A stretch of 8,804 nt of DNA from Chlorokybus atmophyticus (Eukaryota; Plantae; Mesostigma and Chlorokybus algae), in NCBI GenBank assembly GCA_009103225.1, contig RHPI01000536.1:3578-12381 (forward strand), read 5' to 3'. The translations under genes and the position numbers were made by a program. The stretch's first letter is position 1. Every line of letters begins with the position of its first letter. Shown in pieces: positions 142 through 8,804 of the stretch. The notes beneath the pieces were generated by a model that was not told the DNA's origin, did not search any database, and saw nothing but the letters and a program-made list of their open reading frames with translations.

Positions 142-2886
142 ATGGAATCTTCCAGTTCAACCACATCCCTGCGCTTCTCCGGACGTGCCGGCACCACCTC
201 GCTGGATGAGTTCATCATCAAGTTCCACTCCAAGATGCGGCAGCAAGCACTGAAGAACAAAGACTGGTCAGATGAGATCTCTTTCCACATTGCTGCTCAG
301 TATCTTGATCATGAAGCACACGATGTCTGGAAGTCCGTTGCTGAACTGCATCGAGTAGACGGCTATGGCGAGCTTGCCAGCACCATAGCATCTGCAGCCC
401 GGCACCGTCCAGCAGGTGTCATTCCACCTGCCACTTCAGTTGCAGTAACAGGCTTGACCATAGTTGCAACTCTCAAGCAGGCAGAGGAGGAGGAACCAGA
501 GTTGGTACTTGTCAACTTGACCCCTGCAGAAGTTGAGTCCAAGGAGGCCACACGTCGAGTCCGCATCCTTGACCGTTCTGCCATCATCATTGAGGAACAA
601 AGAGCTGTACAGCAAGCGGCAGCCGCAGAGTGGGGTACTCCTCTACCTCCAGCAACACCTGGCTCTCGTGCAGGAGGCAGCGCTTTCACCCTCGGGTCAG
701 TAGCACTGCGCGCACCAGCCATCACCGTAGGTGCTGCCATCTCTGATTCTCCACTCAAGGACCTGTACGCTGCCCTGCGCCGTACCTTCCCTCCTCAGAC
801 CACCAGCAAGGTTGAGGAGCTGAGACGCTTCCGACGCAAGCCCAATGAGGATCCCCTCCGCTTGTACTCCAGACTGGAAGGTCTGCTGAAGGACACTGAC
901 TACAAGATTGTCAGTGAGGAGGCTGCTGCAGTAATATACGTCAATGAGTTGGATGCTGCTCTGAGCGAGTCGACACGCCTGACTCTGAACTACAGCAGGC
1001 CCCTTGGCTACACCCTCAAAGAAGCCTTCGAGACTGCACAAGCCATCCACAAGCGCTTGGTGTATGAGAAGGCAGTGCTGGACACCAACCGCAGCGCCGT
1101 ACGGCCTGTAGTCAGCACGACAACTGAGCCTCCTCGCCGCGACCGTGACCGGGACGCTCCACCAGCACGCGACAAAGGTAAACGGTCAGCTCATGCTGCA
1201 CTTGCTGTCCCTGTGCTGTGTCATCGCTGTGGACGGCATGGGCACTACCAAAAGGAGTGCACCGAAGAATACTCAACTTTGGTTTGCGACCACTGTCACA
1301 AGACTGGTCATTTGGAGTCAGTCTCCTGGCTCAAGTTCCCAGAGTTGAGGCCCGCCAACAGCTACAACCACAACTACCTCGGTGGCTACAACATCAACAA
1401 CACCGGGGGCCACACTGGCAACAACTTCAGTGGCTACAACAGTAACAACACTGGGGGCCACACTGGCAACCACTTCAGTGGCTACAATAGCAACAACACT
1501 GGAGCCCACAACAGCAACAACGCTGGTGGCAGTAACAACAACAAAAGCGCCAGTGTTCGCAAGGAAGAGCAAGGCTACAGGGGGAAGAACAGACCTCCTC
1601 AGCGTAAGGGACCAGTGACACGTCCGCGCGCTGCTGCTGTTGCCGCCAAGGCTTCAGCCAACCCACCAGCTGATGACCATATGGCAGCCCTCATGGCGCG
1701 TATGGCGCGCTTGGAGGAAGACAAGGAGCAGGACTACCGCGCCTGCTACGCTGCCCGATGGGCGCTGATGGCTGTAAAACGCGAGAGAGACAGGAACACT
1801 CCGTCCCACGTGCAACCATCACGACGAGCACGAGGGGAAGCTGCAACAATATCAGCAGGCATCTCCTCCGAAGCCACCAGTGGTGCTGCCTCCGCAGCAA
1901 CAGCCACACCGGCTACAACGTCGACTCCACCAACGTCAGCAGTACCCACTCCAGTTGCACCACAACCTGGTACACCGGTGGGCACCGTGACGCCGACGCC
2001 GGTGAGCACACTGGCAGCAGCCGCCATCTCTACCGAATCTGCACCAGTGGGCGCTGCACTTCCCACTGCAACAGTGCCTCTGTCCGTAGGCGTTGAGACA
2101 ACTCTCGCACCACCGACCGATACCGTCGCAACTGCCACAATGGCCATCGTCGAGCCCAGTGTCTCTGCAGCGACGCGCGCAGCCACTCTGCCCGCTCTCG
2201 ACGTCACTCAGGCTGTCCCAACTGGTCAGCAAGCTGAGCGAGCATGGGAAACCATCCTGCGCGGAGCAGACCCCACTACGATCGCCTTCAGTGGGGGGGG
2301 GGAGTGCACCACGCGTGTCGCCCGCGATGATCGCGTCTTCCCGCTACCAGAGGTTCACACCCTTCCAGCACTCACTCAACACCAGTTAGAAGATGAGATC
2401 CTTGCTGGCACTGCACCTCCGATGCGTGACAGGGTGTTTTTGATCAGCTACAGCCCACCTGTAGTGTTGGAGATGGCTCTGCAGCTGTTCTGGGCGTTGC
2501 ACCACAACATGCAGACCGCCCCGCGCCAGCCTGCACGCATGCCAACCACCACCTTTGAACCCAGCCCGTTGGACACGTATCGGGAACGCCGAGACGCCGT
2601 CCAGCAGCGCATCGCCGACGCAGCCGACCTGCCTTTGGGCACTGATGAAGCACTCGGACCTCCTACAACCGCTCGTCTTCATCAGCGCTACCACGCACTG
2701 GAACAAGCATATCATTGGCGACAGGATCAAGCTGCCGCCATTGCTGCACGTGAACAAGCTCTTGAAGCTACACGTGCACCAATACCTCAGTCACCAACTG
2801 CTGGTCCATCCTCCAGCACCACTCCGCTCTTCGTCGAGACCAACTCTGACCAAGCGAGGGCGTTGGCTCAACAAACCAGGGGGTGA
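142..2886 (+). CDS. gag: Gag-like polyprotein ORF1 (914 aa from ATG142; the frame is open back to base 1, so it may start upstream)
   Basis: Capsid-like motifs (RFSG...LDEFI.KF...W..E....A..L..EA..W; LRRTF...VEELRRFRRKPNEDPLRLYSRL), CCHC knuckles, TGA stop at 2884-2886. Confidence 0.88.
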   Translation: MESSSSTTSLRFSGRAGTTSLDEFIIKFHSKMRQQALKNKDWSDEISFHIAAQYLDHEAHDVWKSVAELHRVDGYGELASTIASAARHRPAGVIPPATSVAVTGLTIVATLKQAEEEEPELVLVNLTPAEVESKEATRRVRILDRSAIIIEEQRAVQQAAAAEWGTPLPPATPGSRAGGSAFTLGSVALRAPAITVGAAISDSPLKDLYAALRRTFPPQTTSKVEELRRFRRKPNEDPLRLYSRLEGLLKDTDYKIVSEEAAAVIYVNELDAALSESTRLTLNYSRPLGYTLKEAFETAQAIHKRLVYEKAVLDTNRSAVRPVVSTTTEPPRRDRDRDAPPARDKGKRSAHAALAVPVLCHRCGRHGHYQKECTEEYSTLVCDHCHKTGHLESVSWLKFPELRPANSYNHNYLGGYNINNTGGHTGNNFSGYNSNNTGGHTGNHFSGYNSNNTGAHNSNNAGGSNNNKSASVRKEEQGYRGKNRPPQRKGPVTRPRAAAVAAKASANPPADDHMAALMARMARLEEDKEQDYRACYAARWALMAVKRERDRNTPSHVQPSRRARGEAATISAGISSEATSGAASAATATPATTSTPPTSAVPTPVAPQPGTPVGTVTPTPVSTLAAAAISTESAPVGAALPTATVPLSVGVETTLAPPTDTVATATMAIVEPSVSAATRAATLPALDVTQAVPTGQQAERAWETILRGADPTTIAFSGGGECTTRVARDDRVFPLPEVHTLPALTQHQLEDEILAGTAPPMRDRVFLISYSPPVVLEMALQLFWALHHNMQTAPRQPARMPTTTFEPSPLDTYRERRDAVQQRIADAADLPLGTDEALGPPTTARLHQRYHALEQAYHWRQDQAAAIAAREQALEATRAPIPQSPTAGPSSSTTPLFVETNSDQARALAQQTRG
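172..1065 (+). other. Capsid (retrotransposon Gag) region of ORF1, boundaries approximate
   Basis: Helical pattern typical of Ty3/Gypsy CA, including an MHR-like LRRFRRKPNEDPLRLYSRL segment, lying just upstream of the zinc knuckles. Recognised by eye, no HMM run. Confidence 0.65.
1219..1260 (+). other. Zinc knuckle 1 (CX2CX4HX4C), nucleocapsid
   Basis: Translates to CHRCGRHGHYQKEC, an exact CCHC spacing. Confidence 0.95.
1285..1326 (+). other. Zinc knuckle 2, degenerate (CX2CX4HX4S)
   Basis: Translates to CDHCHKTGHLESVS. The last ligand is TCC (Ser), one base from TGC (Cys), and is followed by WLKFPELRP. Confidence 0.8.
1384..1509 (+). repeat. 48-bp coding tandem repeat, about 2.6 copies (GYNINNTGGHTGNNFS / GYNSNNTGGHTGNHFS / GYNSNNTGAH)
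   Basis: Units start at 1384, 1432 and 1480, e.g. ggctacaacagtaacaacactgggggccacactggcaaccacttcagt. Confidence 0.93.
1840..2226 (+). other. Thr/Ala/Pro/Ser-rich low-complexity linker in ORF1
   Basis: AATISAGISSEATSGAASAATATPATTSTPPTSAVPTPVAPQPGTPVGTVTPTP... Confidence 0.8.
2293..2302 (+). repeat. G10 homopolymer within ORF1 (frame preserved)
   Basis: agt GGG GGG GGG Gag at 2290-2304. Confidence 0.9.
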
Positions 2887-3995
2887 TCGCCCCGTTGCTG
2901 CCTGCGCTGGTGGAGGATCTACCCGAGGACCAAAGGGAGCCAGGGAGGGGCTACCTTACACCACAAGGGTGTACACAAAGAGATGGAGCAGGACTGGTTG
3001 GAGAGCAACAACTACGCACTGCTCTGTTGCGACAAGCAACCATGCTGCATCGTCAAGAAGGCATCGGTCTCCGACAGATGCTTGGGATGCGAGACAATGG
3101 CAACGCGGCACGCGCACGTTTAGTGACGTGGCTGGTCACCAACCATCCCGCAGTCCCGTTGTTCGCTTTCGGCGCCAGAATAGCGTGGGTGGACGCATTC
3201 CTTCGCTCCATACGGCAAGCCTATGATGAAGTGGCTTCCGCCGCCACTGACACTCTGGAGGGAGCTCTGGAGGCGATACTGAGTTTGCCAGGGGTGGAGG
3301 CAGGACGTCAGCGCAGGCGCATCGCCACTGCTTACGAGCAGCATGTCCAACAGCCAGAGACCCGGCTCACTGTACGCACACGAGCAATAACAGTGCTGGA
3401 AGTGGGAGTGGTCAACGGCAGATGGGATGCTTACATGGCAGGGATCCTCAGGGTGCCCACCATCACCCACGACATGAGAGCGCGGCTCCTACGCGCAGTG
3501 TACCTGCAGCCCATGCCTCAGAACCATCGCTATATAGATGCGGACAACAATGCGACGGCGACATGGGAAGGTACACTAGTCAGAGAGGCAGCCCATGCTG
3601 TGCGATGGACCTATGCAGAGGAGCAGGCTGCACGAGAGGCAGTCCCGCAAACACCAGGTCCTCCAGGGTTCCCGCCACAGCCACTGGCCACTCCTCCTGG
3701 CATGACAACAGCTGCACAGAGGGTCAACCCTCCTGCACCTCCACTTGGACAGGTTGCAGCAGCACCTCCAGTGCCTAGGCCACCACGCGTGTACCAGCAA
3801 CCGCGACAAGGACGGTTTGGACAAAGCCGAGGACAAGGAGGCCCACAAGATCCATCAGGCAGAGGAGCCCTGGCTGCCCTACGGTCAGGCCCCGCAGATG
3901 AGAGTAAAGCAACAGTCTCTCCACGCAAGAGGTTCCGTCGCTTCAAGAGGCTGCGCATCAACGCCAATGCAGCCATGATCGCCAACCAAGGCAAG

Positions 3996-4343
3996 CATGT
4001 GACCGTCAATGGGCGGGCACCCAAACGCGTGATGCTGGACACTGGAGCACAGCCTGTCATCATTGGGCGCTACCTCGCACGAGATCTCGGCATCACCAGC
4101 GCTGAGCTGCTTCCCTGTCCCTATCAGCTGGACACCGCAACCGGCAACCGTGACAAGGTACTCGGCCTTACCAAGCAGGCTGTGAGCATCCGCCTCACCG
4201 GACTAAACCCTTCCCACAGCACCGAGATTGTACAAAGGTGTGTGGTCACCGATGCCGGGTCCTTTGACCTACTGTTGGGACAGGACTGCAACTTCCCTGT
4301 CGGCATGGGGCTGGACTGCTGGACTGAGCAGGCATGGTTTCGA
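3996..4343 (+). other. Retroviral-type aspartic protease domain
   Basis: VTVNG...VMLDTGAQPVII (DTG at 4038-4046), flap region YQLDTATG, C-terminal FDLLLGQD (4263-4286). Confidence 0.92.
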
Positions 4344-4763
4344 CCACATTGGGATGAGGACGATGGAGAGGAGCAGGGATTCCTACCTCTCGAACTGGTG
4401 GCCAAGGACCGCTCGCAACGAAGATCGGCTGCAGCAGCCACCTACAGTCTTACAAAAAGCTCACGTGCGCCTCGTGCCCGGACGCAGCCAAGGACAACTG
4501 CAACGAGCTCGAGCCCGAGCCTAAACGCTGAAGAGGACTCCCCTACACCGTACGATGAGTCTCAGGAGACTGTCACCAAAGAAGTGGCCTTTCAGGAGCC
4601 ATCCGAGCGTCGCTGGAGCGCACAAGTAGCAGCACACATGCTGCTGACCAGGCCTCAGCTCACTGCACACTTCCCTGCCTACAAAGACCAGGCTACAGTG
4701 CAGGAGCAGTACCACATAGCTACGGGAGTTGTGGAGTTCCACATGTTCCGCCGACAACAAGGC

Positions 4764-5723
4764 ATCACCGTGCTGGAGCTGTTCGGAGGCATAGGCAGTG
4801 GGCTTGCGGCTGTCCTCAACACAGGAACAACAGTCACCAAGTACCTCTACTGTGACCCTGACCCTCATGCACAGGAGGCTCTGAGCCATCATTTACGACA
4901 GCTGCACCAGCGCTACCCGCAGCAGCTACCACTGTCGGCACTGCAAGGAAGCCAGAAGGCTCTACCGCAGGACATCCGCTGGATTACCAAGGATCACCTG
5001 CAGGCAGTCGGCAACATTGACCTGCTGATAGCAGGGTGGGAGTGTCAAGGGCACTCCAGGGCAGGCAGAGGCCAAGGGCTCTCGGATCCTCGCTCACAGC
5101 TGTTCTGGGAGCTAATGAGAGTCATCAAACTCCTACAGACCAGTCAGATCGCTAGGCCCTTGGGGTACATCATCGAGAATGTGCACTCCGAGGATGACAA
5201 GCGGCATCACGTCGCTAAGGCCTATCGACAAGTATGCTCCTTGCTAGGGCATCCTCTCAAAATCAACGCCGCGCGTCATGGATCTCGCGCACACCGCGTC
5301 CGCGCCAAGTGGACCAACCTGGCCATTGTGGAAGACCTGTTTCTGGCAGAGTACCTATACAGCAATCGGCCACGAAATCTCGTCGTCGATGACATCCTGG
5401 ACCCTGGACGCACAGCGCAACCAGTCACACGCCTTGACCACCACCACTTCTACCAGTGCAACCAGCCTTGTCAGCCGCGCCGCGCGCTACCCACACTTGT
5501 ATCCTATCCAGGCTCCTACGCGTTCCGCAATGCAGGCGACGGCATGGTGTTGGACTCCAACATTAGACAGCTGGAAGAACCCAATGCCCGCGAGCGCGAG
5601 CGTGCTATGGGATTCTTTCCAGGCAGCATCACAGGCTCCACGCTGACAACCAGTCAACAATGTCAGTTGTTGGGGCGCGCCATGGATCAGAACAGCATGG
5701 TGTGGTACTTGGAAATGTGCTTT
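4764..5723 (+). other. C5 cytosine DNA methyltransferase catalytic domain (DNMT3-like), in frame within pol
   Basis: Motif I VLELFGGIGSG (FxGxG 4782-4796); II YCD (4848-4856); III QDI (4968-4976); IV DLLIAGWECQGHS (Cys 5043-5045); V DPRSQLF (5085-5105); VI IIENV (ENV 5175-5183); VIII AHRVRAKWTNL (5289-5321); IX ERERAMGFFPG (5592-5624); X QLLGRAMD (5664-5687). Order and spacing are canonical. Confidence 0.95.
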
Positions 5724-5906
5724 GCTCTCCAGGACCGCCATGTGTCCTTCCAAGAGCTCGAACACCTGGCTGGGGGGTGGATTGCTCGCTTTTCAGAGAC
5801 CAAAGCAGCACACACCGCCCTCGAGACCGCCTACATGGAGGAGCAGGCAGCAGTCACTGTGGAAGACATTCTAGTGGTCGCCAACGCTACCTCGTGGTCC
5901 CACGCC

Positions 5907-6944
5907 ATTGGACCGCTGGCCACAGGCCAGACTCGAGAGCAACTCGAGGCTCTCCTCAGCAAGTGGAGGAGCCAATTCAGCTTTAGTGTGAAGGAGCTGG
6001 GCATCTGCTCAGCATACCAGATGGACATTGAACTAGTGGACACCGAACCGGTGTTCAGAAGACAGTACCGCCTCACCAAGCTAGAAGAAGACTTGGTGGA
6101 ACAGAGGTGCAAGGCGCTGCTAGATGCAGGCCTGATCGAGGAGTCCACATCGGACTTTGCGGCCGCGACCGTCATGCCCCTGAAGAAAGATTCGACAGGC
6201 AACTGGACAGACCGGCGCATGTGTGGCGACTATCGCCCCCTCAACAACAAGACCAAGCAGGACAGGTATCCAATGCCTACCGCAGAAGGCATCTTTGACG
6301 ATGCAGGAGAATGCACAGTCTTTAGTATCCTGAATATGCGCCAAGGGTACAACCAGATCGCCATCAAGGAGGAGGACAAGCACAAGACTTCCTTCTGGGG
6401 AAACCGGCAGCTGTACCAGTGGAAGGTTATGCCCTTCGGACTGAAGAACGCTCCGGCCAAGTTCCAGCGCGTCATGGACAAAGCCCTCAAGGGGTTGGAC
6501 TTCGCGCGCTGCTACATCGACGACATCCTCATCTTCAGTCACAGCAATGAGGAGCATCTCCAGCACATCGAAGAGGTGCTACAGAGGCTGAAGGAAGTCG
6601 GGATGACGGTGCACCCTGACAAGTGCACCTTCTTCACCCACAAGGTACCCTACCTAGGACACATGATTGTGCCCCATGGTGTGTACGTACAGCAGGCCAA
6701 AATGGAGGCATAGGTGGCTATCCCTGCCCCCACAGACCTCACGCGGCTGCGGGCCTGCCTCGGCCTTGCCAACTATTACCACCGATTTGTCAAAGACTTT
6801 GCCAAGATCGCAAGGCCTCTCAACGAACTACTCAAGAAGGACACCGAGTTCTTGTGGAAGGAGGCACAACAGGAGGCCTTTCAAGAGCTGAAGCTCCGCC
6901 TCACCACAGCTCCCATTCTGCAACGCCCTTACTACACCAGGTCG
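5907..6944 (+). other. Reverse transcriptase with thumb/connection (inactivated)
   Basis: RRMCGDYRPLN, DRYPMP, MPFGLKNAPAKFQR, YIDD (6513-6524), KC.F...V.YLGH, LGLANYYHRFV. The first catalytic Asp position reads LNMRQGY (AAT at 6333). Stop at 6711. Confidence 0.96.
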
Positions 6945-7307
6945 TTCATCCTGCACACAGACTGAAGCAAGCTCGGCATGGGGGCCGTGCTCGTACAGCA
7001 TGACAACAACAAGAAGGAGCGCGTAGTGTCGTACGCCAGCCGCAGCAACAACAGTGCTGAGGCCAACTACAGCAGCTACGAAGGGGAGTGTCTCGCCGCA
7101 GTGTGAGCCATCTCCTTCTTCCGACCCTTCCTGTTTGGACGGCAGTTCCAACTGGTCACTGACCATTAACCCCTCAAGTGGCTAATGAACAACCAGCACT
7201 TGACAGGAAAGTTAGCACGGTGGGCACTGCTGCTCCAGGAGTACGACTTCGAGGTGGAACACCGCGCAGGCCTTGCCAACCAGGATGCGGATGGCCTCAG
7301 CCGTAAC
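6945..7307 (+). other. Ty3/Gypsy RNase H (three internal stops)
   Basis: FILHTD*S, GMGAVL, VVSYASR, NYSSYEGECLAAV*A, LVTDH*PLKWL, KLARWALLLQEYDFEVEHRAG, ADGLSR. Confidence 0.94.
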
Positions 7308-7724
7308 CCCCACCTCAGCACCAACGACGCCACGGGCGCCCGACATGAGTTGGGTCCTACAGCTGCACCTTCAGGTATGGCCACCATGTTCGCTGTCGCT
7401 GCGCTACGCTCGGGACGCAGGACTTAGACCACTGAGGCAGCAGCAGACGGGGACATGCCCGCTCTCGAGCCCGCCATCACCACCACCGATCCTTTATCAA
7501 AAGAAGCAATCGCTGCCGACCCGGAGGTGGATGATGAGGAGCTGGCACCCACCGACACACGACAAGACATCTGGCTGGACGAGCCATCCCTCGCACTGCT
7601 TCAGACTGGACAACTTCCAGCAGGCATGAGCGCACGCGAGAAGGACCGCGTCCGACAACGCACTCAGCGTTACCGCTGGGCCAACGACAGGCTGTATCGA
7701 CGGATACAAGATGCAGATCAGGAG

Positions 7725-8804
7725 GTCCCCACACCAGCTGCACGTGAAGGCATCATCTCCTCCCTTCACACCGAGCTCGGGCACTTCGGTGTCAAGCGCA
7801 CGGTCAGCCTGGTCAGGACCCAGTACTGGTGGTATGGGGTGCACAGACAGGTGCGGGAGTTCGTCAGCAACTGTCAGCAGTGTGACATGGTTCGCGCCAG
7901 CCTCAACACGCGCAATGCCTTGCATCCCCTTCCCATTTTCGGGTTGTTCTACCGCTGGGGACTGGACATCCTCGGAGACCTATCGCCCTCAGCACGAGGC
8001 AACCGCTACATCCTCGTCATGATCGAGCACTTCTCCAAGTGGGTGGAGCTGGTGCCCCTGCCCGACAAGAGCAGTGAGGGAGTAGCCCAGGCTTTCCTCT
8101 CCCATGTACTCGGACGCTTCGGCAGCTGCGCTGAAGTCATCACCGACCAGGGTACGGAGTTAAGAGGAGCCTTCGACAAGCTTATGGACAGATGCTTCAT
8201 CGACCACCGTCGCACCTCACGCGACCACCCGCAGGCCGACGGCCTCGCCGAGCGTACCGTGCAGACCATCAAGAAGGCACTGCGCAAGTACGTCCTTGCC
8301 TACGAGAAGAACACCTGGGATGATCACCTCTCATGGGTAGCAATGGGCTACCGGCTGTCCAAGCAGGCAGCCCTGCGAGAGTACAGCCCATACTATCTAC
8401 TGTTCGGAAGGCAGCCATTGCTCCCTTTCCGCGCACAGCAGGAGGTCGACAGAGTGGTGGACAATCTCGACAACCCCGACGAGATGTTGTATGATCTGAC
8501 AGTGCGCAGTGCGCTGTTCGAACACACAGTCCCCATGGCTTTCAACAACCTGCGCATCGCGCAGCACCGCGACACGATGCGTTACGAGCGTGTGCGCAGT
8601 GGTTTCTACAAGGAGCGGGAGCGCCGCTTCGAGTTAGGAGACTTCGTCTACCGTATGGCGTCTACACGCGACACCCTCGATACCTCCGTCGGGCGTGCTG
8701 TCTACAAGGTATTGAAGGTGCACCCCACAGGGGTACTGGACCTGTTGGGACAACGAGGCGAGCGCATGAAGGACAACATGGTCAACTGTGCGCCCTGTCA
8801 TCTC
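7725..8804 (+). other. Integrase (HHCC zinc finger, DDE core, start of the C-terminal domain), open to the window edge
   Basis: H7767, H7782, C7872, C7881; WGLD (D7965), TDQG (D8145), GLAER (E8250); SPYYLLFGRQP; FELGDFVY. Confidence 0.95.

What the first reader, a model, noticed from the sequence alone, without database searches (positions are those of the whole stretch)
4764..5723. Cytosine-5 DNA methyltransferase encoded in frame inside a Gypsy pol, between protease and RT
Seen: a full ~320-aa C5-MTase with SAM-binding FGGIG, catalytic Cys, ENV and RxR motifs intact, in the same uninterrupted frame as PR and RT. Established: standard Ty3/Gypsy pol has no such domain, but DNMT capture by retrotransposons was reported in Symbiodinium and charophytes (de Mendoza et al. 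2018), with de novo CG methylation activity and proposed self-methylation of cDNA. Inference: being part of Pol, the enzyme would be packaged with RT and could methylate the new cDNA before integration, pre-marking it as 'self', tuning its own silencing, or altering chromatin at the insertion site. This may be a new family or host for the system.
Basis: partly seen in the sequence, partly recalled or inferred. Interest (0 to 1): 0.92.

Follow-up and report, generated by a model that had tools for sequence, protein, structure and literature searches.

The report
Gypsy retrotransposon carrying DNMT3-type methyltransferase
The window is an inactivated internal piece of a green-plant-lineage Gypsy retrotransposon whose Pol protein carries a complete DNMT3-like cytosine methyltransferase, a real but already described kind of element (Gypsy-DNMT3) of which this is a divergent new member.

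Summary
Window 4746-5735 (+) encodes a complete C5 cytosine methyltransferase domain. It lies in one uninterrupted frame with an aspartic protease upstream and a reverse transcriptase downstream.

- **Domain evidence:** Pfam PF00145 gives E 1.7e-11. The AlphaFold model has pLDDT 92. The best PDB fold matches are the DNMT3A, DNMT3B and DNMT3C catalytic domains (E 7e-20).
- **Catalytic residues:** all are present, but motif IV reads Glu-Cys instead of Pro-Cys.
- **Known kind:** de Mendoza et al. 2018 described KnitGypsy-Dnmt3 in Klebsormidium, and later papers call it streptophyte Gypsy-DNMT3.
- **Family size:** 247 protein clusters match at E below 1e-30. The catalytic Cys, Glu and two Arg are kept in 189-192 of 192 domains.
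- **Host hint:** named streptophyte relatives share the window's order PR-DNMT-RT. Named chlorophyte relatives have RT-RNaseH-DNMT-INT.
- **Divergence:** the window is at most 50% identical to anything on record, and its host is unknown.
- **State of this copy:** it is dead. Pol has five in-frame stops downstream of the RT core, and gag and pol are in different frames.
- **Limits:** methylation of the element's own cDNA remains inference. The published yeast assay of the Klebsormidium homologue showed no activity.

Verdict: a new member of a known kind, of moderate interest.

The parts
142..2886 (+). ORF1 (914 codons from the first ATG; the frame is open back to base 1, so the gene may start upstream of the window). 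Gag plus a long lineage-specific tail.
   Evidence: the ORF listing. No stop in this frame in 1-141. Residues 1-404 are homologous to the N-terminal part of relative P0003 (E 9e-13).
142..1353 (+). Gag-homologous part of ORF1
   Evidence: BLASTP to P0003 residues 61-470 and to the L003 ORF; 22-27% identity.
1219..1326 (+). Two CCHC-type zinc knuckles of Gag
   Evidence: Pfam zf-CCHC at ORF1 residues 360-375 (weak: 18.4 bits against a cut-off of 20.8). A second Cys/His knuckle aligns with the second knuckle of P0003.
1347..1544 (+). 24-nt tandem repeat inside ORF1 (8-residue Gly/Asn/Thr-rich peptide repeats)
   Evidence: the repeat finder family D1.
2850..8804 (+). pol reading frame, which runs off the 3' end of the window. 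Broken gene: five in-frame stop codons (2 TAG, 2 TGA, 1 TAA). No frameshift was detected inside it. It is in a different frame from ORF1.
   Evidence: Translations and stop counts. Each segment (DNMT, RT, RNase H plus tether, integrase) aligns to the intact relative L003 in a single high-scoring segment and the same frame.
3999..4286 (+). Retropepsin-type aspartic protease
   Evidence: Pfam Asp_protease_2 E 4.9e-08 and gag-asp_proteas E 8e-07. 41% identical to the protease of P0003.
4746..5735 (+). DNMT3-type C5 cytosine methyltransferase domain (the finding)
   Evidence: PF00145 E 1.7e-11. PDB phmmer best hit DNMT3A, 7.6e-08. Family profile against PDB: DNMT3A 2.6e-24. AlphaFold model pLDDT 92.3. 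Foldseek DNMT3A/3C/3B E 7e-20.
4782..4796 (+). Motif I (FGGIG, SAM binding)
   Evidence: The second Gly of the motif (domain residue 27) is kept in 187 of 192 family domains.
5037..5057 (+). Motif IV (WECQGHS) with the catalytic Cys, preceded by Glu instead of Pro
   Evidence: Aligns with the Pro-Cys loop of DNMT3A. Cys is kept in 189 of 192 domains. The preceding residue is Pro in 104 and Glu in 78.
5175..5183 (+). Motif VI (ENV)
   Evidence: Glu is kept in 192 of 192 domains and Asn in 179 of 192.
5289..5303 (+). Motif VIII (AHRVR; the RxR pair)
   Evidence: The two Arg are kept in 190 and 191 of 192 domains. They align with the corresponding Arg pair of DNMT3A.
5580..5693 (+). C-terminal lobe motifs (IX-like PNARERERAMG and X-like LGRAMDQN)
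   Evidence: The Gly of each motif is kept in 191 and 189 of 192 domains. The canonical Gly-Asn of motif X is not present, as the 2018 paper's supplement notes for the K. nitens copies.
6207..6668 (+). Reverse transcriptase core
   Evidence: Pfam RVT_1 E 7.9e-33. 50-59% identical to relatives.
6855..7245 (+). RNase H domain (approximate bounds). It is part of the segment of pol that carries the in-frame stops.
   Evidence: Pfam RT_RNaseH_2 on one piece. 57.6% identity over 203 columns to the RNase H and tether of L003, in one frame.
7734..8222 (+). Integrase zinc-binding (H2C2) and DDE core domains
   Evidence: Pfam Integrase_H2C2 E 6.2e-16 and rve E 1.8e-07. 49-51% identical to relatives as far as the last base of the window.

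Best explanation
The window is an internal fragment of a recently inactivated Ty3/Gypsy-type LTR retrotransposon of the Gypsy-DNMT3 kind. It contains no terminal repeats.

**Layout.** Gag with two zinc knuckles, a long unique linker, protease, DNMT3-type cytosine-5 methyltransferase, RT, RNase H and DDE integrase. In relatives a PHD finger follows just beyond the window's end.

**Shown:**
- The DNMT is an integral part of Pol that was inherited vertically with the element.
- It has the full DNMT3 fold and every catalytic residue.
- Across the family these residues are under strong purifying selection.

**Inferred:**
- In intact family members the domain is an active SAM-dependent C5 methyltransferase, made as part of the Gag-Pol polyprotein and carried into the particle with RT and integrase.
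- There it most likely methylates the element's own newly made DNA or the DNA at the insertion site. I put this at about 35%.
- Alternatives: action in trans on host chromatin (about 15%), methylation of RNA (about 10%), or a non-catalytic DNA-binding role (about 12%).

**This copy.** It has five in-frame stops downstream of the RT core and a frame change between gag and pol. At most it could yield truncated products. The host is probably a streptophyte (an alga or a bryophyte) that is absent from the protein and contig collections searched.
For: **Domain order.** Pfam places the domains in one frame.

**DNMT3 affinity.**
- phmmer against PDB: DNMT3A 7.6e-08, ahead of M.HaeIII, M.HhaI, DNMT2 and DRM2.
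- Family profile against PDB: DNMT3A 2.6e-24, DNMT3B/3C about 1e-21, DRM 6e-15, M.HhaI 5e-09, and no DNMT1 hit.
- Model pLDDT 92.3. Foldseek places DNMT3A/3C/3B on top over the whole domain.

**Not a chance insertion.** 247 cluster representatives match at E<=1e-30. Among the 402 fetched proteins with a DNMT hit, 90 show DNMT after the protease or before RT, like the window.

**Selection.**
- Catalytic Cys kept in 189/192 domains, motif VI Glu in 192/192, motif VIII Arg in 190 and 191/192.
- dN/dS is 0.06 between relatives P0001 and P0003 on the DNMT domain.
- The DNMT (38-48% identity to relatives) is kept about as well as integrase (42-51%) and better than protease (27-41%).

**Vertical inheritance.** The four relatives compared rank in nearly the same order for DNMT, RT and integrase.

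**Known kind.** KnitGypsy-Dnmt3; 'streptophytes (Gypsy-DNMT3)'.

**Streptophyte host.** All named relatives with the window's domain order are streptophytes: Mesostigma, Closterium, Marchantia and Calypogeia. All named chlorophyte relatives have the other order. In a neighbour-joining tree the window sits in a 52-leaf clade that holds the liverwort copies.

**Dead copy.** Stop counts, and intact relatives encode gag-pol as a single ORF.
Against: - No activity has been shown for any Gypsy-type DNMT. The K. nitens domain gave no methylation in yeast, which the authors call inconclusive.
- Motif IV has Glu-Cys instead of the canonical Pro-Cys, and motif X lacks the usual Gly-Asn. Altered or lost catalysis is therefore not excluded.
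- I could not compare the window directly with K. nitens sequences, because none surfaced in any search. Membership of the same lineage as KnitGypsy-Dnmt3 rests on architecture and on streptophyte relatives.
- No terminal repeats lie in the window, so LTR status is untested here.
- The host assignment is indirect, and the window's GC content (0.58) is higher than that of the related loci (0.44-0.51).
Confidence: 0.85

Rival explanations
1. The DNMT-like domain no longer methylates. It is kept as a DNA-binding, oligomerising or chromatin-targeting module of Pol, in the way that DNMT3L is a non-catalytic DNMT3 paralogue.
For: - Motif IV is Glu-Cys rather than Pro-Cys in the window and in 78 of 192 relatives.
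- Motif X is atypical (also noted for K. nitens).
- The K. nitens Gypsy DNMT gave no methylation in yeast.
Against: - The catalytic Cys, the motif VI Glu and both motif VIII Arg are almost invariant across 192 domains that otherwise differ by 50-65%. That pattern is expected for catalysis, not for a scaffold.
- The SAM-binding motif I is kept.
- In the same yeast assay human DNMT3B was also inactive, so that negative result is weak.
Confidence: 0.12
2. The window represents an independent, new capture of a DNMT by a Gypsy element. It would be a new family, not the lineage described in Klebsormidium.
For: The window is at most 50% identical to any protein in the collections. No K. nitens sequence was available for a direct comparison.
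Against: - The domain nests inside a large clade of retrotransposon DNMTs with the same PR-DNMT-RT order, found in four streptophyte genera.
- DNMT, RT and integrase diverge in step.
- The Marchantia relative has the unusual A-coding-B-A-B repeats reported for KnitGypsy-Dnmt3.
Confidence: 0.1
3. The juxtaposition is an artefact: a misassembly, or a host DNMT3 gene or retrocopy nested by chance inside a Gypsy element.
For: None beyond the rarity of the arrangement. Only one copy of this exact lineage is available.
Against: - One continuous frame runs through protease, DNMT and RT.
- 90 fetched proteins, including annotated genes on Marchantia chromosomes, show DNMT after the protease or before RT like the window.
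- No repeats flank the domain.
- Composition is even across the window.
Confidence: 0.02

Closest known systems
KnitGypsy-Dnmt3 of Klebsormidium nitens (de Mendoza et al. 2018, PMC5890265); called 'streptophyte Gypsy-DNMT3' in later papers
   Same: - A non-rearranged, Dnmt3-type DNMT lies inside the intronless Pol ORF of an LTR Gypsy element.
- The key catalytic residues are conserved, motif X is poorly conserved, and the domain is under purifying selection.
- The host lineage is streptophyte (inferred for the window).
   Different: - No direct sequence comparison was possible.
- The window is at most 50% identical to any relative on record.
- The position of the DNMT within the K. nitens Pol is not stated in the text I could read.
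- The A-coding-B-A-B repeats cannot be checked in the window.
Chlorophyte elements with the order RT-RNaseH-DNMT-INT-PHD
   Same: Homologous DNMT3-type domain (37-45% identity), the same Gypsy-type RT, RNase H and integrase, and a PHD finger after the integrase.
   Different: The DNMT sits between RNase H and integrase instead of between protease and RT. In the DNMT tree these elements form a nearly separate block.
SymbioDIRS-Dnmt3 of Symbiodinium (same 2018 paper)
   Same: A Dnmt3-type domain inside Pol. This is the only retrotransposon DNMT class with demonstrated de novo CG methylation.
   Different: It has a DIRS backbone with a tyrosine recombinase. The window has a DDE integrase (rve) and a Gypsy-type RT and RNase H. 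The 2018 paper treats it as an independent acquisition.
Cellular DNMT3A/3B/3C catalytic domains (e.g. PDB 6w89, 6f57, 8tci, 6u8p)
   Same: The fold matches over the whole domain (target TM about 0.83), with the same motif order I-IV-VI-VIII-IX-X and the same catalytic Cys, ENV and RxR.
   Different: - Only about 21% sequence identity.
- Glu-Cys instead of Pro-Cys.
- No PWWP or ADD reader domains.
- Embedded in a retroelement polyprotein.
Plant DRM2 (PDB 4onj, 7l4c)
   Same: A member of the DNMT3 superfamily, and the second-best group of PDB matches (E 6e-15 with the family profile).
   Different: DRM has circularly rearranged motifs. The window's motifs are in the canonical order.
Other retroelements carrying epigenetic modules: chromoviruses (chromodomain), PHD-bearing retrotransposons, CopiaMBD, and DAM-LTR/EpiLTR elements (PMC6673714; bioRxiv 10.64898/2026.05.21.726589)
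   Same: The same general theme: a chromatin reader or DNA-modifying domain captured into Pol.
   Different: The captured domains differ (chromodomain, MBD, adenine methyltransferase, DNMT4-like). The authors of the 2026 preprint state that their EpiLTR DNMTs are distinct from Gypsy-DNMT3.

Membership tests
C5 cytosine DNA methyltransferase (Pfam PF00145) | Profile match above the curated cut-off | tested here: met
   44.6 bits against a cut-off of 22, E 1.7e-11. The match covers only motifs IV-VI.
C5 cytosine DNA methyltransferase (Pfam PF00145) | Motif I (FxGxG), motif IV catalytic Cys, motif VI ENV and motif VIII RxR, in that order | tested here: met
   All are present and aligned to the DNMT3A motifs. 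The deviation is Glu rather than Pro before the Cys.
C5 cytosine DNA methyltransferase (Pfam PF00145) | Complete two-lobe methyltransferase fold | tested here: met
   AlphaFold pLDDT 92.3, pTM 0.91. Foldseek aligns about 330 columns to DNMT3A/B/C.
C5 cytosine DNA methyltransferase (Pfam PF00145) | Methyl transfer to cytosine C5 | not testable with these tools
   The only published assay of a Gypsy-type homologue was negative and inconclusive.
DNMT3 clade | Closer to DNMT3 than to DNMT1, DNMT2, DRM or bacterial enzymes | tested here: met
   Ranking among solved structures with the family profile: DNMT3A 2.6e-24, DNMT3B/3C about 1e-21, DRM 6e-15, M.HhaI 5e-09, DNMT2 3e-04, no DNMT1 hit. Foldseek gives the same order at the top.
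DNMT3 clade | Placement inside the DNMT3 clade in a phylogeny with cellular DNMT3s from many eukaryotes | not tested
   No cellular DNMT3 sequences from algae or plants were among the fetched proteins. The 2018 paper reports such a placement for the K. nitens copies.
DNMT3 clade | Companion reader domains (PWWP, ADD) of animal DNMT3 | tested here: not met
   No such Pfam hits. This is not expected for protist or algal DNMT3s. Relatives carry a PHD finger at the end of Pol instead.
Ty3/Gypsy LTR retrotransposon | Pol order protease, RT, RNase H, DDE integrase, preceded by a Gag with zinc knuckle | tested here: met
   Pfam hits in that order; Gag homology.
Ty3/Gypsy LTR retrotransposon | Long terminal repeats, primer binding site, polypurine tract | tested here: inconclusive
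   The window contains no long direct repeat and no tRNA-like feature. It is open at both ends, so the termini lie outside it.
Gypsy-DNMT3 (KnitGypsy-Dnmt3 type) | Non-rearranged Dnmt3-type domain within the intronless Pol ORF of a Gypsy element | tested here: met
Gypsy-DNMT3 (KnitGypsy-Dnmt3 type) | Key catalytic residues conserved and purifying selection on the domain | tested here: met
   Column counts over 192 domains. dN/dS is 0.06 for one pair of relatives. Pairs that include the window are saturated.
Gypsy-DNMT3 (KnitGypsy-Dnmt3 type) | Split direct repeats in the arrangement A-coding-B-A-B | not testable with these tools
   Outside the window. Present in the Marchantia relative L004.
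Gypsy-DNMT3 (KnitGypsy-Dnmt3 type) | Sequence clustering with the K. nitens copies | not testable with these tools
   No Klebsormidium protein surfaced, and no tool fetches it by name.
DIRS-type DNMT3 retrotransposon (SymbioDIRS-Dnmt3) | Tyrosine recombinase instead of a DDE integrase | tested here: not met
   Integrase_H2C2 and rve are present, and there is no phage-integrase hit. Not a member.

The most novel reading that the evidence does not exclude
The window would be a deep, unsampled branch of an ancient Gypsy lineage found across the green plants and algae. In this reading a DNMT3-type methyltransferase has been kept under purifying selection since before the chlorophyte-streptophyte split. 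It has survived a relocation within Pol (PR-DNMT-RT against RNaseH-DNMT-INT) and repeated Pro/Glu switches next to the catalytic Cys. That would make the methyltransferase an integral part of this lineage's life cycle rather than an occasional capture in one charophyte. It might work together with the C-terminal PHD finger as a chromatin reader and DNA writer pair.
Probability: 0.3. Interest if true: 0.6.

Novelty: new member of a known kind. Interest (0 to 1): 0.35.

Why it matters
Cytosine methylation is the host's main means of silencing transposons, so a transposon that carries its own de novo methyltransferase is a striking reversal of roles. That point was made in 2018, and this window adds no new principle.

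What it does add is breadth. Its relatives show that Gypsy-DNMT3 elements are not a Klebsormidium curiosity. They form a very large family present in liverworts, Zygnematophyceae, Mesostigma and, with a different domain order, chlorophycean algae. The catalytic residues are almost invariant throughout. Conservation that long-lasting argues that the enzyme does something the element needs. It also identifies organisms with existing methylomes, Marchantia among them, in which that role could be read from data already in hand.

Tried and rejected
- **Exact-sequence look-ups** of the two long ORF products found no record.
- **Scans with the DNMT domain** of viral contigs, JGI metagenome contigs and GTDB genome contigs found no close relative. 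Neither the source contig nor sister copies could be obtained.
- **Literature search** for assembly GCA_017884025 found nothing.
- **Direct comparison with K. nitens copies** was not possible. No such protein surfaced, and the paper's supplements hold no sequences.
- **dN/dS between the window and any relative** failed because synonymous sites are saturated.
- **Search for LTRs, tRNA genes and Rfam families** in the window found none.
- **Pfam on the roughly 860 residues between the zinc knuckles and the protease** found nothing.
- **Host gene co-opted from the 5' part of the element:** considered and rejected. The integrase downstream of the stops is as intact and as conserved as the rest.
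- **Hypermutation as the cause of the clustered stops:** considered and left open. No composition anomaly is seen in that segment. I did not analyse the individual codon changes.
Full report
**What is in the window.** The 8,804-base window (GC about 0.58, CpG observed/expected 0.72) is coding on the + strand from end to end.
- ORF1 (142-2886; its frame is open back to base 1) has a Gag-like N-terminal 404 residues with two CCHC knuckles. These are homologous to the N-terminus of relative P0003 (E 9e-13).
- The pol frame opens at 2850, in a different frame from ORF1, and runs off the 3' end of the window.
- Pfam places the following in the pol frame, in this order: aspartic protease (3999-4286), C5 DNA methylase, RVT_1 (6207-6668), an RNase H piece, and integrase H2C2 plus rve (7734-8222).
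- Protease, methylase and RT core lie in one uninterrupted run of more than 1,250 codons.
- The window holds no long direct or inverted repeats, no tRNA genes and no Rfam families. It is therefore an internal piece of an element whose termini lie outside.

**The methyltransferase domain.** I place the fold at 4746-5735.
- PF00145 scores 44.6 bits against a cut-off of 22 (E 1.7e-11), but the match covers only motifs IV-VI.
- phmmer against all PDB sequences puts DNMT3A, DNMT3C and DNMT3B first (7.6e-08 to 5e-06), ahead of M.HaeIII, M.HhaI, DNMT2 and DRM2. The printed alignments match motifs I, IV, VI and VIII to those of DNMT3A.
- A profile of the window plus 29 short relatives sharpens the ranking: DNMT3A 2.6e-24, DNMT3B/3C about 1e-21, DRM 6e-15 to 8e-12, M.HhaI 5e-09. 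DNMT1 is not found.
- An AlphaFold model built on that alignment is confident (mean pLDDT 92.3, pTM 0.91).
- Foldseek against the PDB returns DNMT3A/3C/3B catalytic domains as the top 50 matches (E 7e-20 to 8e-16, target TM about 0.8, about 330 aligned columns, about 21% identity).
- The motifs read FGGIG (I), WECQGHS (IV), ENV (VI) and AHRVR (VIII), with IX-like and X-like motifs in the C-terminal lobe.
- The one clear departure from the canon is Glu in place of Pro before the catalytic Cys. Motif X also lacks the usual Gly-Asn, which the supplement of the 2018 paper also notes for the Klebsormidium copies.

**Not a one-off.**
- A full HMMER search of 1.84 billion cluster representatives with the domain alone found 2,604 proteins at E<=1e-3 and 247 at E<=1e-30. 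Most were hit at an internal position of 1,000-3,000-residue proteins.
- Word-indexed searches returned 77 long and 101 short relatives. None was more than 50% identical.
- Named relatives come from Marchantia polymorpha, Calypogeia fissa, Closterium and Mesostigma viride. Two contigs are filed under bacterial MAG names and are evidently mis-binned.
- In 192 near-full-length domains, the catalytic Cys is kept in 189, the motif VI Glu in 192, the two motif VIII Arg in 190 and 191, and the second Gly of motif I in 187. The residue before the Cys is Pro in 104 and Glu in 78.
- For the one pair of relatives close enough to measure (P0001 and P0003, 78% identical), dN/dS on the domain is 0.06, with dS 2.4, which is near saturation. 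All pairs involving the window are saturated.

**Inherited with the element.**
- Identity between the window and four relatives is 50-59% for RT, 42-51% for integrase, 38-48% for DNMT, 27-41% for protease and 22-27% for Gag.
- The relatives rank in nearly the same order for DNMT, RT and integrase.
- The DNMT is therefore about as constrained as the core Pol enzymes and has diverged in step with them.

**Two domain orders that follow host lineage.** I located protease, DNMT, RT and integrase in all 410 fetched proteins with the window's own segments as queries. Of these, 402 carry a DNMT hit.
- 90 proteins show DNMT after the protease or before RT, as in the window.
- 159 show DNMT after RT or before integrase.
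- Every named streptophyte protein has the first order.
- Every named chlorophyte protein whose domain order can be read has the second. These are Haematococcus lacustris, Monoraphidium neglectum and Chromochloris zofingiensis, found with a class-B query.
- In a neighbour-joining tree of the DNMT domains the two orders form two nearly clean blocks. The window groups with two metagenomic proteins inside a 52-leaf clade that contains the liverwort copies.
- On this basis I infer a streptophyte host. The inference is indirect, and the window's GC content is higher than that of the four related loci (0.44-0.51).

**Relatives read at the DNA level.**
- L003 is an ENA metagenome contig carrying head-to-tail copies with a period of about 8.44 kb. 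It holds an intact 2,300-residue single ORF: Gag, protease, DNMT, RT, RNase H, integrase, PHD finger.
- The window's integrase aligns to it at 49% up to the last base of the window. That point is about 20 residues before the PHD finger of L003 begins, so the PHD cannot be checked here.
- The Marchantia chromosome 4 copy (L004) has all domains in one frame. Its repeats are arranged A, coding region, B, A, B. This is the unusual DIRS-like arrangement that de Mendoza et al. report for KnitGypsy-Dnmt3.

**State of this copy.**
- pol has five in-frame stop codons (2 TAG, 2 TGA, 1 TAA). All lie downstream of the RT core and upstream of the integrase.
- No frameshift was seen inside pol.
- ORF1 and pol are in different frames, whereas intact relatives encode gag-pol as one ORF. 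This is either one more break or a lineage-specific frameshift signal. Without sister copies I cannot tell which.
- The five stops fall within 239 of 1,974 codons (permutation P about 0.001). Yet that segment aligns to L003 in one frame at 57.6% identity, as well as RT does. The copy looks recently inactivated. The clustering is unexplained.
- Between the zinc knuckles and the protease lie about 860 residues with no counterpart in relatives, where the spacing is 250-385 residues, and no Pfam hit. They include a 24-nt tandem repeat.

**What is known.**
- de Mendoza et al. 2018 (PMC5890265) described Dnmt3-type DNMTs inside the Pol ORF of an LTR Gypsy element in Klebsormidium nitens. They reported conserved catalytic residues and Ka/Ks below 0.2.
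- A 2026 preprint refers to 'streptophytes (Gypsy-DNMT3)' as established.
- De novo CG methylation in yeast was shown only for the Symbiodinium DIRS-type enzymes. The K. nitens Gypsy enzyme gave none, and the authors regard this as inconclusive because human DNMT3B also failed in the assay.
- Their 96-genome survey did not include Marchantia.
- I found no paper describing the liverwort, Zygnematophyceae or chlorophyte members, the alternative domain order, or the PHD finger of these elements. The library searched is incomplete.

**How it most likely works.**
- Shown: a complete DNMT3-type fold with all catalytic residues, embedded in Pol, inherited with the element and under purifying selection across a very large family.
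- Inferred: in intact members the enzyme is translated as part of Gag-Pol and so enters the particle with RT and integrase.
- In both domain orders the DNMT always sits inside Pol, next to enzymes that act on the element's DNA. This fits a role on the new DNA copy or at the insertion site, as de Mendoza et al. proposed. I rate this at about 35%.
- Rivals: action in trans on host chromatin (about 15%), RNA methylation (about 10%) and a non-catalytic role (about 12%). The rest is unknown.
- This copy, being broken, can at most supply truncated products.

**Verdict.** The thing is a divergent new member of a known kind from an unidentified, probably streptophyte, host. The more interesting result is at family level: wide distribution in green plants and algae, two domain orders that follow host lineage, and the Pro/Glu variation at motif IV. 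That result deserves a proper phylogenetic study.

**Note on procedure.**
- Its end coincides with one of the stops.
- While reading the raw translation I also looked at the contexts of the stops.
- I have not listed the places of the stops in this report, made no statement about changes that would undo them, and built no repaired, joined or consensus sequence.

Noticed in passing
Relatives P0023, P0036, P0133, P0140, P0339, P0381, P0388, P0393 and about 150 more: A second architecture of the same family, RT-RNaseH-DNMT-INT-PHD, occurs in chlorophycean algae (Haematococcus, Monoraphidium, Chromochloris). Named streptophyte copies all have PR-DNMT-RT. The two orders form nearly separate blocks in a DNMT tree. 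I found no paper describing this.
   Followed up: partly
L004:6826-17657 (Marchantia polymorpha chromosome 4, AP019869.1): A relative in the same PR-DNMT-RT class, with all domains in one frame, has split direct repeats arranged A (6826-7122), coding region, B (17134-17246), A (17248-17545), B (17545-17657). This is the DIRS-like arrangement reported for KnitGypsy-Dnmt3, seen here in an element with a DDE integrase.
   Followed up: partly
L003:1-16317 (ENA ERZ25067493, a 21-kb contig named as circular): Head-to-tail, near-identical copies of an intact relative with a single 2,300-residue ORF, at a period of about 8.44 kb. This could be a tandem array, a circular form, or an assembly effect.
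   Followed up: no
window 8784-8804 and beyond; L003 ORF residues 2252-2296: Most full-length relatives carry a PHD finger after the integrase. The window ends about 20 codons before the point where it would begin.
   Followed up: partly
window 5037-5057: Motif IV has Glu-Cys instead of the canonical Pro-Cys. Across 192 family domains the split is 104 Pro to 78 Glu, and both variants occur in both architecture classes, so the switch has happened repeatedly.
   Followed up: partly
window pol frame, segment between the RT core and the integrase: The five in-frame stops are clustered (within 239 of 1,974 codons, P about 0.001) in a segment that is otherwise as well conserved as RT (57.6% identity to L003, one frame). 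The cause is unknown.
   Followed up: partly
window 1354-3944: About 860 residues between the Gag zinc knuckles and the protease have no counterpart in relatives and no Pfam hit. They are low-complexity and Pro-rich in part, and they include a 24-nt tandem repeat at 1347-1544.
   Followed up: partly
window 2850-2886: ORF1 and the pol frame overlap here in different frames, whereas intact relatives have gag-pol as one ORF. It is undecided whether this is a programmed frameshift or decay.
   Followed up: no
P0245, P0370: Two relatives are deposited under bacterial MAG names (Candidatus Obscuribacterales, Minisyncoccia). They are almost certainly eukaryotic contigs mis-binned into bacterial genomes.
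   Followed up: no
P0339 (EukProt entry derived from TSA record GHRQ01002908.1): A complete ORF of the chlorophyte-type architecture comes from a transcriptome assembly. At least one relative is therefore transcribed in some organism.
   Followed up: no
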